Position numbers and translations under genes: made by a program. Shown here piece by piece: positions 29,110 through 43,510 of a stretch of DNA of 64,000 nucleotides. The DNA lies in IMG/VR virus record IMGVR_UViG_3300023313_000001, positions 1 through 64,000 of that record; one strand, 5' to 3'. The first letter of the stretch is position 1. Every line of letters starts with the position of its first letter. The notes under the pieces are model-generated. The model ran no database searches. It was not told the origin of the DNA and worked only from the letters and a program-made list of their open reading frames with translations.

Positions 29110-29184
29110 GGGCCTATGGTGGAATGGATATCACACAAGCCTACGAAGCTTGAGTTCCAGGTTCGAATCCTGGTAGGCCCGCCA
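29110..29184 (+). tRNA. tRNA-Arg(ACG)
   Basis: CAAGC-CTACGAA-GCTTG; GCCA. Confidence 0.9.
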
Positions 29185-29190
29185 AACAAT

Positions 29191-29268
29191 GCCCCTGTAG
29201 TCTAACTGGATAGGCACTTCACTACGAATGAAGACATTATGTAGGTTCGAATCCTATCAGGGGTGCCA
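29191..29268 (+). tRNA. tRNA-Arg(ACG), second non-identical copy
   Basis: CTTCA-CTACGAA-TGAAG; body nearly identical to tRNA-Arg(TCT) at 31086. Confidence 0.9.
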
Positions 29269-38263: not shown

Positions 38264-38779
38264 ATGTCGCACAATTGCAAATACACTTCGACCAAAACTT
38301 ATCACCAAGCGTTCCCTGTGGCATACCGTCAATGGCGTGCAGATCGAAAGAGTGGTAAAACATCTGGCATGTATACTCAAACTGAAATTCCTGGATGTAA
38401 CGCTATCCATGGATATGCTCTATCAATGCATTTTGAATTTTCCACAGATGTTCTAGATGCTAGAAATTGGGTTATGGATTTTGGTGGTTTAAGAGAACTG
38501 AAAAATATGTTAGATGAATACTTTGACCATACATTATTATTAGCTCAAGATGATCCAGATTATGATCAGATCAAAGCGTTAGGAACTGCTGGGCTTGCTA
38601 AGATAACGGAAGTTGAACGAACTGGATGTGAAGGAATAGCTGACTGGTTATATGAATACATCAATACCATATTTTTACCAAATTATGGTGAGGCTGATCG
38701 TATATGGTGTACTAAAATAGAAGTAAGGGAAACTGATAAAAACATGGCGTTCAGAAGTGGTTATCGAGATATTGAATAA
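38264..38779 (+). CDS. queD: 6-pyruvoyl-tetrahydropterin/6-carboxytetrahydropterin synthase
   Basis: AYRQWRA...C..IHGY, LD.RNWVMDFGGL, FDHTLL, GCE, EVRET.KN.A. Confidence 0.85.
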   Translation: MSHNCKYTSTKTYHQAFPVAYRQWRADRKSGKTSGMYTQTEIPGCNAIHGYALSMHFEFSTDVLDARNWVMDFGGLRELKNMLDEYFDHTLLLAQDDPDYDQIKALGTAGLAKITEVERTGCEGIADWLYEYINTIFLPNYGEADRIWCTKIEVRETDKNMAFRSGYRDIE

Positions 38780-39039: not shown

Positions 39040-39171
39040 AATATATACCTAAGCACTGGATGATTCGACTGAGTGCACTTTGAGTTTCAAGTCGACGCAA
39101 GTTGGGAGGTCTTGTTCCTTTATCTTCCAAACTTTTTCATTACAATACATAAAACACAAGGAAAATTAATA

Positions 39172-39864
39172 ATGTCGTATAATAAATTAAAGTGTGACAG
39201 TGCACTAGGTGCACTAGTCCAAAAACATCTCGAATCTCTACAATTACATACTCCAATGGTAGAATCTCCTTTATCAGAACAACAAAAAATTGATGCTATC
39301 AAACCCTTAATGCATGATATAATGGCAGTATTAGGATTAGATCTGACTGACGATAGTTTAGCAGACACTCCCCACAGAGTGGCTAAAATGTTTGTGAGAG
39401 AAATTTTTTGGGGATTAGATCCAGCTGCGTTTCCCAAATGTACAACAGTCAATAATAAAATGACTAGGGGGAATGAGTTCGTGTTAGAAAAAAACGTAAG
39501 CGTTAACTCTACATGCGAACACCATTTTCTACCCATATTAGGTGGATGTTGTATAGCGTATGTTCCACAAGATAAAGTTTTAGGATTGAGTAAGTTAAAT
39601 CGAGTCGCTGAATATTTCTCCAAGCGACCTCAGGTACAGGAAAGATTGACATCTCAAATTAGAGAGGCACTGGCCTTTATCTTAGGCACAGACGATGTTA
39701 TTGTTTACATCGATGCCAAACATACATGTGTGTCTACTAGGGGGGTGGAAGATGTTGGGTCGTCTACCGTAACGATGTCAGCTGGCGGTATATTTAATAC
39801 CCCAGAGTCTAGCATTCGATCTGAATTTTTAGCAATAGCTAGATCTGGAATGAATTTAGTGTAA
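39172..39864 (+). CDS. folE: GTP cyclohydrolase I
   Basis: LDL.DDSL.DTP.RVAKM, STCEHHF, GLSKLNR, RPQVQERLT, HTCV..RGV. Confidence 0.95.
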   Translation: MSYNKLKCDSALGALVQKHLESLQLHTPMVESPLSEQQKIDAIKPLMHDIMAVLGLDLTDDSLADTPHRVAKMFVREIFWGLDPAAFPKCTTVNNKMTRGNEFVLEKNVSVNSTCEHHFLPILGGCCIAYVPQDKVLGLSKLNRVAEYFSKRPQVQERLTSQIREALAFILGTDDVIVYIDAKHTCVSTRGVEDVGSSTVTMSAGGIFNTPESSIRSEFLAIARSGMNLV

Positions 39865-40618: not shown

Positions 40619-41137
40619 ATGTTATCAATTTACACCCCCGAAGTAAAATTAACCCCATCTATTAACATGTTTGTAGCTGGCAGTATTGAAATGGGAACTG
40701 CTGAAAATTGGCAAGACCTTCTGTTACAAAAGCTATCACTATTTAATGATGATGAATCATTTAACCTCAATGTGTTTAACCCTCGTCGAGCTGATTGGGA
40801 TACATCTATTGATCCTACATCCAACGATCCCGAGTTAATGTATCAAATTAATTGGGAGTTAGATGCATTAGATACAGCAGATATTATTGTATTGTTCTTA
40901 GATCCGAACACTAAATCTCCAATATCGTTATTAGAATTAGGATTATACTCTGGTAAGCGACTGATAGTGTATTGCCCACCAGAATTTTATCGAAGTGCTA
41001 ATGTACGAGTTACCTGTGCACGACACGACATTGAATTGCACACCGATCGTAAGGAATGGATTGATTCTATATTGGGTACTATATTGATATTACTTGAACG
41101 AAAGATAACCCCTACAACAGTCCTGGATTTCCAATAG
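40619..41137 (+). CDS. nucleoside 2-deoxyribosyltransferase-like protein
   Basis: F.AGSIEMG.A.NWQ, FNPRR.DWD, QINWEL.AL..AD, SPISLLELGL. Confidence 0.85.
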   Translation: MLSIYTPEVKLTPSINMFVAGSIEMGTAENWQDLLLQKLSLFNDDESFNLNVFNPRRADWDTSIDPTSNDPELMYQINWELDALDTADIIVLFLDPNTKSPISLLELGLYSGKRLIVYCPPEFYRSANVRVTCARHDIELHTDRKEWIDSILGTILILLERKITPTTVLDFQ

Positions 41138-41230
41138 GTAATAAGCGTTAGATATAGTTATGTGGTTGATATCAACATGGAGTTACCGTAACCCTGTTGT
41201 ATTAATGTCAAATGTATGTACAATTGCTTC

Positions 41231-41327
41231 ACTGATTTGTTGCGAAGCGTAGAGTTACTTCAAAAATACTCGACCTTAACCGTCGAGCTTAATGCTTACA
41301 CTTTTCGTGTTTTTATCTCAAACCAGT
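41231..41327 (+). ncRNA. Y RNA 1 (Ro60-associated, no tRNA-like domain)
   Basis: Shared TGCGAAG..AGAGTTACTTC / TCG..TTTTATCTCA motifs, terminal stem, upstream of Ro60. Confidence 0.7.
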
Positions 41328-41351
41328 ACTAAACGGGCTATATAGTAGCAC

Positions 41352-41443
41352 GTTTTTAAGAATATTGCTGCGAAGCATTGGGTTACTTCACTTTTAATGA
41401 AACTAACACCCTATCGCGATTTTATCTCAGTATTCTTAAAAAC
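41352..41443 (+). ncRNA. Y RNA 2 (Ro60-associated)
   Basis: Same motifs; long terminal stem TTTTAAGAATATTG/CAGTATTCTTAAAA. Confidence 0.7.
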
Positions 41444-41578
41444 ATGTTGCTGCGAAGATTAGAGTTACTTCTATGGTAAAGACGAGATGTTGGTTCGAGT
41501 CCAACTCAATCCGTAAGGATTGATAGCTTAACGGATAAAGCACGAAAATCTCTCTCATCGATTTTATCTCAACATGTT
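41441..41578 (+). ncRNA. Y RNA 3, YrlA-type with permuted tRNA-like domain
   Basis: T arm GTTGG-TTCGAGT-CCAAC, closed acceptor hairpin, then D arm TAGCTT..GG..AAGC. Confidence 0.8.
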
Positions 41579-41660
41579 ATTATTAATATTATCAACTTCG
41601 TTAACTATTTTGAAATGATAACGGAAAATACATTTCCATAACCTCACAAAATATTTAACG

Positions 41661-41800
41661 AAGTTGATGTTGCGAAGATTAGAGTTACTTCTCCCTGGAT
41701 GTCGTCGGTTCGATTCCGACTTTAGGATCTGATTCCTTTATAGCTCAGTTGGTAGAGCGCCTGGCTCAACAGTCTCTTATCGTTTTTACCTCATCAACTT
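41661..41800 (+). ncRNA. Y RNA 4, YrlA-type with permuted tRNA-like domain
   Basis: T arm GTCGG-TTCGATT-CCGAC, then TAGCTCAGTTGGTAGAGC D arm. Confidence 0.8.
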
Positions 41801-41840
41801 GTTTTATTTAAGCTGCTCAATCTCTTAATAGGAAACTACA

Positions 41841-43388
41841 ATGACTAAAATGAACCCAAAAAATACAAACACTAACCGTTACAAAGGCGTGAGCTTTAAC
41901 AGGAATGTTCAAGAACTGAAAGGTGCTGAACAAGCTCTGTATGAAATCATTGTAACTACTTTATTCGGTAAGGATAAATTTTACGAATCAAATGATGAAA
42001 CACTAGTGCGTTTAAAAGATGCTGTGAATAAGGTCGTTGCTAAAGGTAACGTGGATTTCATTGCAAACTCAATCGTGCACGCTCGTTCAGTAATGAACAT
42101 TCGTTCTATGCCAGTAATATTAACTGTGTTGTTGGCAGAGTCTCTCCGTGCACACAATACTACATATGAAAACATGCGTCGATTGACTACGGATGTTATT
42201 CAACGTGCTGATCAAATCAATGATTTATTTGCGTATGCAGTAAACGTATTTGGATCGGGTAAAAAAGTTCCTATGGCAATCAAACGTGGTTTAGCTGATG
42301 CATTCAACAATTTCGGGGCATACGCTTTTGCGAAATACAATCGCACTAATGGAACGGTAAAGTTCACCGACGTATTGCGTGTTGTTCATCCAAAAGCTAA
42401 GGATGTGGCACAGGCTGAAATTTTCGATAAACTAATGAATGGATCACGTATTGAGCAAACAGAAGCTGGTACACTTTCAACTCCGTACACCTGGGAAACT
42501 GAATTATCAGAAGCAGGTAAAACTGGAAAGTCAAAAGCTAAAGTTTGGACAGAACTAATCAAGTCTGATAAATTAGGTTATATGGCACTGTTACGTAACT
42601 TACGTAATATGATTCAGGAAGGCGTAAGTACTAGTGTGATGAATTCCGTGTATGAGCGACTAGCTGATCCAGAACAAGTTGTTAAGTCTAAGCAACTACC
42701 ATTTCGTTTCGTGAATGCGTATGATGCTGTGGTAGGTGCTCCTGCGAAGATGAAACGTGCTATCTCTCGTGCTATGGATGCTAGTTTATCAAACATACCT
42801 TCACTTGGGGATAACCTTTGGATAGTTGTGGATGTTTCGGCTTCAATGGATGGTACGTGGAGTCTAAGAACTTCCGATGGAGCAGCACCAATTAACACTG
42901 CAACATTATTTGCTGCAGCATTAGCGAAAGCCAATGCTGAGGCTGATAATGTAAAAATAACGTTATTTAGTGATGGTGCTAAGCATGCTTCTATCAATAC
43001 TGACGATAGTGTTATGTCTATTGCTTACAAACTACGTAAAGAGGTTTACGGTGGTGGAACTAACCTGGAGGCAGCACTAAGTGAGATTAAAACTCTCGGA
43101 TTTAAACCAGACACCGTGGTATTGTTTAGCGATATGCAGGTTAACCGGTTACGTGGTGGCAAATCAGTATCTAGTTACTTTGATGACAACACTATTAAGG
43201 TGGCTATAGATCTTACCGGATATGCTTCAACCCCAGTAGGTCCAATGGATGGCTGGCATCAATTGTCAGGATGGAGTGAACGTTTGTTTGATTTCATTCC
43301 AGCCATTAAAAACAAGTCTTCAGTGACGAAACAACTTTCAGTTCCTTATCTCGGGGTAGCTGGAATTAAGAAGCTCCACCGTCAGTAA
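41841..43388 (+). CDS. Ro60/TROVE-vWA RNA-binding protein (Rsr)
   Basis: D.FYES, YAFAKY.R, DVLRVVHPK, PYTWETELS, LGYMALLRNLRN, SKQLPFRF..AY, vWA DVSASM, GGTN, SDMQ. Confidence 0.92.
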   Translation: MTKMNPKNTNTNRYKGVSFNRNVQELKGAEQALYEIIVTTLFGKDKFYESNDETLVRLKDAVNKVVAKGNVDFIANSIVHARSVMNIRSMPVILTVLLAESLRAHNTTYENMRRLTTDVIQRADQINDLFAYAVNVFGSGKKVPMAIKRGLADAFNNFGAYAFAKYNRTNGTVKFTDVLRVVHPKAKDVAQAEIFDKLMNGSRIEQTEAGTLSTPYTWETELSEAGKTGKSKAKVWTELIKSDKLGYMALLRNLRNMIQEGVSTSVMNSVYERLADPEQVVKSKQLPFRFVNAYDAVVGAPAKMKRAISRAMDASLSNIPSLGDNLWIVVDVSASMDGTWSLRTSDGAAPINTATLFAAALAKANAEADNVKITLFSDGAKHASINTDDSVMSIAYKLRKEVYGGGTNLEAALSEIKTLGFKPDTVVLFSDMQVNRLRGGKSVSSYFDDNTIKVAIDLTGYASTPVGPMDGWHQLSGWSERLFDFIPAIKNKSSVTKQLSVPYLGVAGIKKLHRQ

Positions 43389-43409
43389 CTAAATTATCAC
43401 TGATCGCCA

Positions 43410-43446
43410 AATGGGTTAAGGAAGTACTTCCTTAACCCATTTTTTT
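43410..43446 (+). terminator. Rho-independent terminator
   Basis: ATGGGTTAAGGAAG-TAC-TTCCTTAACCCAT plus U tract. Confidence 0.85.
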
Positions 43447-43510
43447 ATGTGTTCAATATAGTTGAGTCCATGTATACTCTGTTCCACATTCATTTATAGG
43501 AGCATCAATC

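What the first reader, a model, noticed from the sequence alone, without database searches (positions are those of the whole stretch)
41231..43388. Four tandem Y RNAs upstream of phage Ro60, in two architectures
Seen: four units share TGCGAAG-N4-(A/G)G(A/G)GTTACTTC and TCG-N-TTTTA(T/C)CTCA within distinct terminal stems. Units 3 and 4 carry a T arm, closed acceptor hairpin and D arm (permuted tRNA mimic); units 1 and 2 do not. Established: YrlA-type Y RNAs with tRNA-like domains flank bacterial and some phage Ro60 genes. Inference: one Ro60 with four interchangeable RNA adaptors, each recruiting or decoying a different partner.
Basis: partly seen in the sequence, partly recalled or inferred. 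Interest (0 to 1): 0.65.

Follow-up and report, generated by a model that had tools for sequence, protein, structure and literature searches.

The report
Four Y RNAs before phage Ro60
A large T4-like phage from a microbial mat carries a Ro60 RNA-binding protein gene preceded by four small Y RNA genes, two with a tRNA-like body and two simple hairpins; this is a sound new example of a system already known in bacteria and phages.

Summary
Four units at 41231-41327, 41353-41442, 41441-41578 and 41661-41800 (+) share TGCGAAG-N4-G(A/G)GTTACTTC. That is 4 exact hits where 0 are expected, and none elsewhere in the 229-kb genome.

They lie 40 nt upstream of a 515-aa Ro60 orthologue (TROVE plus vWA). 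It aligns over residues 30-490 with the solved Thermus phage phiLo Ro60.

I built two covariance models from Y RNA units of other viral contigs only. The short model finds units 2 and 1 (46 and 42 bits). The tRNA-like model finds units 4 and 3 (98 and 92 bits). Across 23 tRNA-like units, 96% of cells pair and 28 of 32 pairs show compensatory change.

Units 3 and 4 have the YrlA layout: T arm, closed acceptor-like stem, D arm. Units 1 and 2 are YrlB-like hairpins with pyrimidine-rich loops.

Arrays of 4 to at least 7 such units upstream of Ro60 recur in other viral contigs, so four is ordinary for this class.

Transcription and Ro60 binding could not be tested; the only RNA run is tiny and empty. 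The data show two classes, not four distinct partners. A 22-bp hairpin that competes with unit 4's closing stem is unexplained.

Verdict: a new member of a known kind.

The parts
41197..41224 (+). Possible sigma-70-like promoter: -35 TTGTAT (41197-41202), 16-nt spacer, -10 TACAAT (41219-41224). It would start transcription near 41231, the first base of unit 1.
   Evidence: Read by eye. It is below the thresholds of the consensus scan, which did not list it. Inference only, low confidence.
41231..41327 (+). Y RNA unit 1, simple (YrlB-like). Closing stem 41231-41239/41319-41327. 5' motif 41241-41261. Upper helix 41247-41255/41300-41308. Apical hairpin 41269-41274/41282-41287 with the 7-nt loop CUUAACC.
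   Evidence: Short-Y model R1, built without window sequences: 41.8 bits, E 1.6e-9, full length. The curated structure is -16.3 kcal/mol against an MFE of -17.5. In this unit the conserved 3' CG reads UG, which keeps a G-U pair with the G of GAAG.
41353..41442 (+). Y RNA unit 2, simple (YrlB-like). 15-bp closing stem 41353-41367/41428-41442. 5' motif 41369-41389. Upper helix 41375-41383/41408-41417 with one bulged C and one U-U. Small hairpin 41387-41390/41398-41401 with loop CUUUUAA.
   Evidence: R1: 46.3 bits, E 8.5e-11, full length. The curated structure is -17.6 against an MFE of -19.3. GGG/CCC here replaces GAG/CUC of units 1, 3 and 4, a compensatory change.
41441..41578 (+). Y RNA unit 3, tRNA-like (YrlA-like). 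It abuts unit 2, sharing A41441-A41442. Closing stem 41441-41449/41570-41578. 5' motif 41451-41471. Upper helix 41457-41464/41552-41559. T arm 41489-41505. Perfect 7-bp acceptor-like stem with GUAA loop 41506-41523. D arm 41526-41541.
   Evidence: Long-Y model R2, built without window sequences: 91.6 bits, E 1.6e-22, full length. Rfam YrlA RF02553: 32.9 bits, E 3.4e-5, below the gathering score of 69. Curated structure -29.1 against MFE -34.7. ARAGORN calls no tRNA here.
41590..41669 (+). Stable 22-bp hairpin in the spacer between units 3 and 4. Its 3' arm includes the 5' strand (41661-41669) of unit 4's closing stem. Role unknown.
   Evidence: dG -26.7 kcal/mol, z -7.25, 0 of 200 shuffles as stable. 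With the full hairpin and unit 4 open the energy is -51.0; with unit 4 closed it is -47.1 kcal/mol. It is not a recognisable Y unit: R1 gives 2 bits or less with filters off.
41661..41800 (+). Y RNA unit 4, tRNA-like (YrlA-like). Closing stem 41661-41669/41792-41800. 5' motif 41671-41691. Upper helix 41677-41684/41774-41781. Anticodon-stem-like helix 41694-41698/41760-41764. 5-nt variable-loop equivalent 41699-41703. T arm 41704-41720. Acceptor-like stem 41721-41740 (5 standard pairs and 2 U-U). D arm 41743-41758.
   Evidence: R2: 97.9 bits, E 3.3e-24, full length. Rfam YrlA: 27.5 bits on the tRNA-like core. Curated structure -33.1 against MFE -35.1.
41841..43388 (+). Ro60 orthologue, 515 aa: TROVE (HEAT-repeat ring) plus a vWA domain with the MIDAS-type DVSASM. 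AGGAAA ribosome-binding site at 41831-41836. It is the only TROVE gene in the record.
   Evidence: Pfam TROVE 4.9e-29 and VWA_2 1.4e-8. Aligns with PDB 9KOP/9L5Y, Thermus phage phiLo Ro60, E 5.6e-24 over residues 30-490. Single TROVE hit in the genome. Phage homologues are 31% identical or less.
43409..43450 (+). Intrinsic terminator (15-bp stem then a T run) closing the unit. No terminator-like site lies between the Y RNAs and Ro60 on the + strand.
   Evidence: Consensus scan.

Best explanation
The 703-nt gap between the upstream gene and Ro60 encodes four Y RNAs.

Shared scaffold. Each unit has (i) a closing stem made from its own 5' and 3' ends. (ii) It has an invariant asymmetric module, 5' UGCGAAG against 3' CG-N-UUUUAYCU; its CGAAG core is the known Ro60-recognition motif. 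(iii) It has an upper helix in which G-N4-GRG pairs with CYC-N4'-C. (iv) An invariant UUACUUC follows. On top sits a variable apical domain.

Apical domains. In units 3 and 4 it is a tRNA mimic in YrlA order: variable-loop equivalent, T arm, acceptor-like stem closed by a loop, U8-A9 equivalents, D arm. An R15:Y48 Levitt pair is possible and differs between them (A:U in unit 3, G:C in unit 4). In units 1 and 2 it is a short hairpin with a pyrimidine-rich loop, as in YrlB and Yrn2.

Inferred mechanism. The array and Ro60 are transcribed together, ending at the terminator at 43409, and the units are cut out of the precursor. Each RNA binds the outside of the phage Ro60 ring through the shared module. 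The apical domain either tethers the ring to a host enzyme or gates the ring's cavity. The most likely enzyme is a 3'-5' exoribonuclease such as PNPase, as shown for D. radiodurans, S. Typhimurium and Thermus phage phiLo. The phage would so redirect host structured-RNA decay or quality control during infection.

Shown here: the repeats, their conserved structure with covariation, family membership, and linkage to Ro60. Inferred: transcription, processing, binding, and the identity of any partner. The data support two functional classes of adaptor, not four.

The confidence of 0.8 is for the identity claim, that these are Ro60-associated Y RNA genes in two classes. My confidence in the tethering mechanism, with a host exoribonuclease as partner, is lower, about 0.4.
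For: Motif statistics: 4 hits against 0 expected, unique in the genome.

Same motif elsewhere: exact matches in 30 viral contigs. In at least 16 of them a Ro60 homologue lies just downstream on the same strand.

Consensus folds of units from other contigs: 12 of 16 pairs (short units) and 22 of 32 pairs (long units) show compensatory change.

Models built without the window recover all four units full length: 46.3, 41.8, 97.9 and 91.6 bits. They find nothing else in the genome.

On 23 tRNA-like units including units 3 and 4: 96.1% of cells pair against 66% in shuffles and 37-47% when partners are slid. 28 of 32 pairs carry double changes, and 0 of 500 shuffles reach the observed values.

Within the array the closing stems differ completely in sequence yet all pair, and the upper helix shows CG/CG against AU/AU and GGG/CCC against GAG/CUC.

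The Ro60 protein is intact, with TROVE, vWA and a MIDAS-type motif.

Literature: YrlA next to Ro60 in 254 bacteria and 22 phages. At least 2 Y RNAs per characterised species, one tRNA-like and one a pyrimidine-loop hairpin. Processing from one precursor in M. smegmatis. Phage phiLo Ro60 binds two upstream Y-like RNAs and host PNPase.

The held genome encodes no PNPase/RNase PH or RNase II domain, so an effector would have to come from the host.
Against: No expression data. The only RNA run from the source sample holds 4 million letters and nothing lies on the locus.

Rfam's YrlA model scores units 3 and 4 below its gathering score, at 32.9 and 27.5 against 69 bits.

The literal GNCGAAN0-1G motif has G two bases before CGAA. 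Here that base is U.

The 616-nt precursor does not fold into four clean units in a minimum-energy prediction. The 41590-41669 hairpin is predicted to out-compete unit 4's closing stem by about 4 kcal/mol.

Units 1 and 2 deviate in the 3' strand (extra bases; UG for CG), which could mean weaker binding.

The jumbo phages nearest by capsid show no such RNAs: Ralstonia phage RsoM2USA has a Ro60 gene but no detectable Y RNA within 2.5 kb.
Confidence: 0.8

Rival explanations
1. The units act in cis as a structured leader of the Ro60 mRNA. For example, Ro60 binds its own 5' UTR to autoregulate, or the structures stabilise the message. They do not accumulate as free small RNAs.
For: There is no terminator between the array and Ro60, and unit 4 ends only 40 nt before the ATG. 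The precursor fold is entangled. The hairpin competes with unit 4's closure.
Against: Homologous units elsewhere form arrays of 4 to at least 7, sometimes hundreds of bases from Ro60. Each has its own covarying closing stem, which is what a stand-alone RNA needs. In M. smegmatis and D. radiodurans such RNAs are cut from polycistronic precursors and bind Ro60 in trans.
Confidence: 0.08
2. One reading: the four RNAs are four functionally distinct adaptors, each with its own partner or decoy target.
For: All four apical domains differ in sequence. [quoted passage not shown] Unit 4's stem has two U-U mismatches but it has an anticodon-stem-like helix. Multi-unit arrays are kept in many phages.
Against: Units 3 and 4 share the same nearly invariant T and D arms and score alike on one model. 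Units 1 and 2 both fit one short model. No partner is known for any bacterial tRNA-like module beyond PNPase. Nothing here tests binding.
Confidence: 0.15
3. Units 3 and 4 are decayed or rearranged tRNA genes, for example a tandem-tRNA junction. The shared motif would then be an unrelated repeat such as a promoter or a binding site for another protein.
For: The window holds 19 tRNA genes and a tmRNA. The junction of two adjacent tRNA-Arg genes gives a weak match to the long-Y model (15.3 bits). Chen et al. warn of this artefact.
Against: ARAGORN and Rfam's tRNA model find no tRNA at units 3 or 4. The T and D arms are enclosed by the covarying Ro-binding scaffold and score 92-98 bits full length. 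The motif is linked to Ro60 genes in many unrelated contigs.
Confidence: 0.02

Closest known systems
Mycobacterium smegmatis YrlA/YrlB and mycobacteriophage YrlA RNAs (Chen et al. 2014, PMC4201824)
   Same: Y RNAs lie upstream of Ro60 on the same strand and are processed from one precursor. One is tRNA-like (T arm, acceptor-like stem, D arm) and one is simpler. They share the CGAA-containing 5' motif. A 7-bp acceptor-like stem is present, as in unit 3 here.
   Different: There are four units here rather than two. The base two positions before CGAA is U, not G. The 3' strand of the module is also conserved (CG-N-UUUUAYCU). [quoted passage not shown]
Salmonella Typhimurium YrlA/YrlB (rsr-yrlBA-rtcBA operon; Rfam RF02553)
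   Same: The YrlA layout and the YrlB-like hairpin with a pyrimidine-rich loop. YrlA is found with Rsr and PNPase.
   Different: No RtcB or RtcA was found in the held 229 kb: the only weak RtcB hit is not RtcB. Rfam's model scores units 3 and 4 below its threshold, and its alignment put the 5' strand in the wrong register.
Thermus phage phiLo Ro60 with Yrl1/Yrl2 (PMC12135203; PDB 9KOP, 9L5Y)
   Same: A phage Ro60, the best solved relative (E 5.6e-24), with Y-like RNAs carrying CGAA just upstream of the gene. It was shown to bind them and to form complexes with host PNPase.
   Different: That paper never uses the term 'tRNA-like' (0 occurrences), and it reports two RNAs, not four. The host and phage type are unrelated.
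Deinococcus radiodurans Yrn1/Yrn2 and RNAs a, b, d
   Same: Several small RNAs lie upstream of rsr, made as a polycistronic precursor. Both strands of the Ro-binding helix are recognisable.
   Different: The order of the T and D arms relative to the 5' end differs in Yrn1. That locus is cellular and UV-induced.
Y RNA arrays in other IMG/VR viral contigs
   Same: The same 5' motif, scaffold and mix of long, T-arm-only and short units, directly upstream of Ro60.
   Different: The usual 3' strand there is CG-N(1-2)-UU(G/U)(G/U)UYCUC with a GA/UC pair next to the closing stem. The window has UUUUAYCUC and a C-U or U-U mismatch at that pair. Several of those arrays are larger (5 to at least 7). The Ro60 proteins are only 25-32% identical.

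Membership tests
Bacterial/phage Y RNA, YrlA type (Chen et al. 2014) | Encoded within 4 kb of a TROVE/Ro60 gene, on the same strand | tested here: met
   All four units lie 40-610 nt upstream of the Ro60 ORF on the + strand.
Bacterial/phage Y RNA, YrlA type (Chen et al. 2014) | 5' motif GNCGAAN0-1G near the 5' end | tested here: inconclusive
   CGAAG (CGAA, N0, G) is invariant in all four units. The first position is U, not G, giving UGCGAAG. The same variant is in dozens of Ro60-linked units in other viral contigs.
Bacterial/phage Y RNA, YrlA type (Chen et al. 2014) | Long stem formed by the 5' and 3' ends that contains the Ro60 site, supported by covariation | tested here: met
   Closing stems of 8 of 9, 15, 9 and 9 standard pairs, plus an upper helix. 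In the family, 7 of 8 pairs in each of the two helices carry double changes.
Bacterial/phage Y RNA, YrlA type (Chen et al. 2014) | tRNA-like module in the order T arm, acceptor-like stem-loop, D arm, with tRNA tertiary determinants such as the Levitt 15:48 pair | tested here: met
   Units 3 and 4 only. T loops UUCGAGU and UUCGAUU. D loops with A14 and G18-G19 equivalents. U8-A9 equivalents. A15:U48 in unit 3 against G15:C48 in unit 4 (read). R2 gives 91.6 and 97.9 bits. Units 1 and 2 lack the module.
Rfam RF02553 (YrlA) | Score at or above the curated gathering score (69 bits) | tested here: not met
   32.9 bits (unit 3) and 27.5 bits (unit 4, partial); nothing for units 1 and 2. I therefore file the units under the wider Y RNA family with YrlA-like architecture, not as hits to this Rfam model.
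Simple Y RNA (YrlB / Yrn2 type) | [quoted passage not shown] | tested here: met
   Units 1 and 2 have apical loops CUUAACC and CUUUUAA. R1 gives 41.8 and 46.3 bits, full length.
Y RNA (any type) | Accumulates as a discrete small RNA and is bound by Ro60 | not testable with these tools
   The only RNA run of the source sample is 4 million letters with no coverage. No RNA-protein predictor is on hand.
Ro60 / TROVE protein | TROVE HEAT-repeat domain followed by a vWA domain with a MIDAS motif | tested here: met
   TROVE 4.9e-29 and VWA_2 1.4e-8. DVSASM aligns with DVSGSM of phiLo Ro60, and the alignment spans residues 30-490.
tRNA gene | Cloverleaf with open acceptor ends and an anticodon arm, recognised by ARAGORN or Rfam RF00005 | tested here: not met
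   No tRNA is called at 41231-41800. The best tRNA-model hit there is 14.3 bits, E 8.3.

The most novel reading that the evidence does not exclude
Phages have expanded Y RNAs into programmed arrays: four here, up to at least seven elsewhere. One Ro60 ring would then be re-targeted in turn to different host RNA enzymes. Some units would be matured like tRNAs; unit 3's perfect 7-bp acceptor-like stem could be cut by RNase P and given CCA. The 41590-41669 hairpin would gate when unit 4 can fold, or be the site where the precursor is cut.
Probability: 0.15. Interest if true: 0.6.

Novelty: new member of a known kind. Interest (0 to 1): 0.35.

Why it matters
It adds a clean, well-delimited Ro60/Y RNA module from a T4-type jumbo phage of a microbial mat. 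The module sits in a genome region packed with translation and RNA-maintenance functions: 19 tRNAs, a two-piece tmRNA, PTH2 and YqeY.

The comparative work also gives something reusable. It yields an extended consensus for the Ro-binding module of phage and actinobacterial Y RNAs, with both strands conserved. It yields two covariance models that reach units Rfam's YrlA model misses. And it shows that arrays of 4 to at least 7 Y RNAs upstream of phage Ro60 are common. That could guide experiments on what the tRNA-like domain binds, which is still an open question. On its own, the window's array does not change what is known.

Tried and rejected
Corrected by one base.
- Rfam at gathering thresholds: no Y RNA family hit. 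With E-values, only sub-threshold YrlA hits, and its alignment of unit 3 starts 11 nt too late.
- DNA similarity of the locus to 50,697 phage records: none.
- Close Ro60 relatives in IMG/VR by peptide patterns: none.
- Genome-contig scan with the motif: many actinobacterial hits that are probably real Y RNAs. The low-GC hits look like chance matches in coding sequence. By my own estimate, about 140 chance hits are expected in 596 Gb. No host clue came out of it.
- Expression: the DNA run holds the locus and the RNA run is empty, so no verdict.
- RtcB: a weak hit in a 976-aa ORF that Pfam shows is not RtcB.
- CCA-adding enzyme, PNPase/RNase PH and RNase II: none in the held 65%-complete record. 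Absence is not proven.
- The hairpin 41590-41669 as a decayed fifth unit: rejected for now, 2 bits or less on R1.
- Y RNAs next to the Ro60 of Ralstonia phage RsoM2USA, a capsid relative: none found.
- GAAG/CUUC pairing within the 5' motif: not kept in family variants that read GUAG or GCAG, so I did not adopt it.
- The two large protein searches, structure prediction and complex prediction were not used. Pfam and PDB settled the protein, and no protein-protein claim is made.
Full report
WHAT IS THERE. The window is the first 64 kb of a 229,507-base IMG/VR virus record that CheckV rates about 65% complete. The record encodes a T4-type major capsid protein (Pfam Gp23, E 2.7e-96) and a large terminase. 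Its capsid is closest to jumbo phages of Stenotrophomonas, Xanthomonas and Ralstonia, at 51-70% identity. The DNA comes from a microbial mat metagenome. The ORF 41841-43388 (+) encodes a 515-aa protein with a TROVE domain (4.9e-29) and a vWA domain (1.4e-8). It aligns over residues 30-490 with the solved Ro60 of Thermus phage phiLo (9KOP/9L5Y, E 5.6e-24), including the MIDAS-type DVSASM. It is the only TROVE gene in the record. Its relatives in phage records are 31% identical or less.

THE OBSERVATION. TGCGAAG-N4-G(A/G)GTTACTTC gives four exact matches at 41241, 41369, 41451 and 41671, with none expected by chance. There are none elsewhere in the genome, even with three mismatches. The 3' pattern is exact in units 3 and 4. 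It has one mismatch in unit 2 and needs a one-base insertion in unit 1. Each unit is closed by its own stem, and the stems are unrelated in sequence: 41231-39/41319-27, 41353-67/41428-42, 41441-49/41570-78 and 41661-69/41792-800.

ANATOMY. Comparison with other contigs (below) shows a shared scaffold. It consists of a closing stem, then the invariant 5' UGCGAAG facing 3' CG-N-UUUUAYCU, then an upper helix in which the last G of GAAG plus N4-GRG-U pairs with A-CYC-N4'-C, then the invariant UUACUUC. All four window units fit it. The upper helix carries compensatory differences inside the array: CG...CG in unit 1 against AU...AU in units 3 and 4, and GGG/CCC in unit 2 against GAG/CUC. A U-U or U-C mismatch recurs at the same place. 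In unit 1 the conserved CG reads UG, which keeps a G-U pair. The hand-curated structures lie within 1.2-5.6 kcal/mol of each unit's minimum free energy.

The apical domains fall into two kinds. Units 3 and 4 carry a T arm (loops UUCGAGU and UUCGAUU), then directly a 7-position acceptor-like stem closed by a loop. That stem is perfect with a GUAA loop in unit 3, and has five standard pairs plus two U-U in unit 4. Then come UA (the U8-A9 equivalents) and a D arm with the A14 and G18-G19 equivalents. The base just before the T stem and the second D-loop base could form the Levitt pair, A15:U48 in unit 3 and G15:C48 in unit 4. Unit 4 also has a 5-position anticodon-stem-like helix and a 5-nt variable-loop equivalent. 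Units 1 and 2 have only a small hairpin with a pyrimidine-rich 7-nt loop.

IS IT THE KNOWN FAMILY? Rfam's gathering-score scan finds no Y RNA. A permissive scan gives YrlA (RF02553) at 32.9 bits on unit 3 and 27.5 bits on unit 4, under the 69-bit cut-off. I therefore looked for relatives directly. The corrected motif occurs exactly in 30 IMG/VR contigs. A few are chance hits inside coding sequence, and these later get no model hit (L008, L013, L019, L020, L024, L029). The rest are Y-like units with a matching 3' strand. In at least 16 loci a Ro60 homologue lies just downstream on the same strand.

RNAalifold on 11 short units and on 10 tRNA-like units from those contigs predicts the scaffold and the T, acceptor-like and D arms. 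12 of 16 and 22 of 32 pairs show compensatory change. Covariance models built from these alignments, with no window sequence, find the window's units full length. R1 (short) gives unit 2 46.3 bits (E 8.5e-11) and unit 1 41.8 bits (E 1.6e-9), and no further unit in the genome: the only other hit is a weak, mis-aligned match to unit 4's 5' half. R2 (long) gives unit 4 97.9 bits (E 3.3e-24) and unit 3 91.6 bits (E 1.6e-22).

On an alignment of 23 tRNA-like units including units 3 and 4, 96.1% of cells form standard pairs. Shuffles give 65.6% and slid partners 37-47%. 28 of 32 pairs carry double changes, and no shuffle reaches the observed values. That alignment was fitted to the model, which favours the structure, but the margin is large and the independent RNAalifold results agree.

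The features match the published definition: within 4 kb of Ro60 on the same strand, a CGAA-containing 5' motif, T/AS/D stem-loops, and a compensating Levitt pair (PMC4201824). One exception is that the base two positions before CGAA is U rather than G. This variant is shared by the viral units and by many actinobacterial genomes.

HOW ORDINARY IS FOUR? Counting non-overlapping R1 and R2 hits gives the following array sizes in other viral contigs: at least 7 units (L023), 6 (L034), 5-6 (L030), 5 (L006, L011, L014, L017, L018, L025) and 4 (L009, L012, L021, L026, L031). They mix tRNA-like, T-arm-only and short units. [quoted passage not shown] It also reports five small RNAs upstream of rsr in D. 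radiodurans (Yrn1, Yrn2 and RNAs a, b, d). Phage phiLo Ro60 binds two upstream Y-like RNAs and assembles with host PNPase. A text search found no paper describing large phage arrays. That size range may therefore be a small new point, but the kind is known.

HOW IT PROBABLY WORKS. No terminator-like site separates the units from Ro60, and a strong one follows the gene at 43409-43442. By eye, TTGTAT-16 nt-TACAAT (41197-41224) would start transcription at about 41231, the first base of unit 1. This is weak and was not listed by the scan. I infer one precursor that is cut into four RNAs plus the Ro60 message, as in M. smegmatis and D. radiodurans. Each RNA would bind Ro60 through the shared module. 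The apical domain would then tether the ring to a host enzyme or gate the ring's cavity. The held genome has no PNPase/RNase PH, RNase II, CCA-adding enzyme or RtcB, so any partners would be host proteins. The record is incomplete, so this absence is not proven. The neighbourhood is rich in tRNA and translation upkeep: QueD, FolE, a nucleoside deoxyribosyltransferase-like gene, Prs, YqeY, peptidase M3, tRNA-Cys, a permuted tmRNA and PTH2. This fits a role in RNA maintenance or turnover during infection. None of the mechanism was testable: the one RNA run from the sample is tiny and empty on this locus.

WHAT DOES NOT FIT. A 22-bp hairpin at 41590-41669 (z -7.25) uses as its 3' arm the 5' strand of unit 4's closing stem. 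Its 5' arm begins with a near copy (8 of 9 bases) of unit 4's 3' strand. The full hairpin with unit 4 open is predicted about 4 kcal/mol more stable than unit 4 closed. The whole 616-nt precursor does not fold into four neat units. The hairpin is not a recognisable Y unit. It may be a processing site, a folding gate or a duplication scar. I could not decide among these.

VERDICT. The identification as Y RNAs in two architectures is supported by independent models and by covariation. The claim of four different partners is not supported beyond two classes. This is a new member of a known kind, of moderate to low surprise.

Noticed in passing
window 41590-41669: A very stable 22-bp hairpin lies between units 3 and 4. 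Its 3' arm is also the 5' strand of unit 4's closing stem, so the two pairings exclude each other. ACCUCA sits just before the 3' arm, as in real units, but the Y model does not match.
   Followed up: partly
window 50655-50980 (tmRNA), 50454-50529 (tRNA-Cys), 51396-51770 (PTH2): The phage encodes a permuted (two-piece) tmRNA (Rfam tmRNA_permuted, 114.6 bits; tag ANDNFFATAIAA). It lies next to a tRNA-Cys gene and a peptidyl-tRNA hydrolase PTH2 gene. By recollection, not tested here, the ANDN start of the tag suggests an alphaproteobacterial-type system.
   Followed up: no
window 640-717: A tRNA with a CUA anticodon, which ARAGORN labels 'Pyl'. It is a possible amber suppressor. I did not check whether in-frame TAG codons occur in phage genes.
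   Followed up: no
window 38264-38779, 39073-39864, 40619-41137: QueD/PTPS and GTP cyclohydrolase I (early 7-deazaguanine pathway) and a nucleoside 2-deoxyribosyltransferase-like gene lie just upstream of the Y RNA array. This suggests base modification of DNA or tRNA.
   Followed up: no
L034:2479-2622(-), L034:2193-2333(-), L006:10371-10510(-): In other viral contigs some Y RNA scaffolds enclose what ARAGORN calls a tRNA. L034:2479-2622 has the unpermuted order of D arm, anticodon-like arm and T arm inside the Ro-binding stem. This is a third architecture, not seen in the window.
   Followed up: partly
L023:774-1585, L034:1415-3051, L030:3469-4145 and others: Tandem Y RNA arrays of 5 to at least 7 units upstream of Ro60 in other IMG/VR contigs, mixing tRNA-like, T-arm-only and short units. 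I found no paper that describes arrays of this size.
   Followed up: partly
window 41165-41176 and 41182-41194: Two short palindromes lie upstream of unit 1: GTTGATATCAAC, and GTTAC-C-GTAAC within GGAGTTACCGTAACC. The second shares GAGTTAC with the Y RNA motif. They may be a regulatory site or may be coincidence.
   Followed up: no
window 29145-29233: The junction of two adjacent tRNA-Arg(ACG) genes gives a weak match to the tRNA-like Y model (15.3 bits). This is the tandem-tRNA false positive that Chen et al. 2014 warn about.
   Followed up: yes
window 41792-41812: Unit 4's closing stem is followed by the U-rich run UUGUUUUAUUU, 30 nt before the Ro60 start. It might act as a leaky terminator that sets the ratio of Y RNA to Ro60 message. 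The terminator scan did not list it.
   Followed up: no
L163 (Ralstonia phage RsoM2USA 41244-47509): This isolated jumbo phage is a capsid relative (51%) and has a Ro60 homologue annotated only as a hypothetical protein. Models R1 and R2 detect no Y RNA within 2.5 kb of it.
   Followed up: yes
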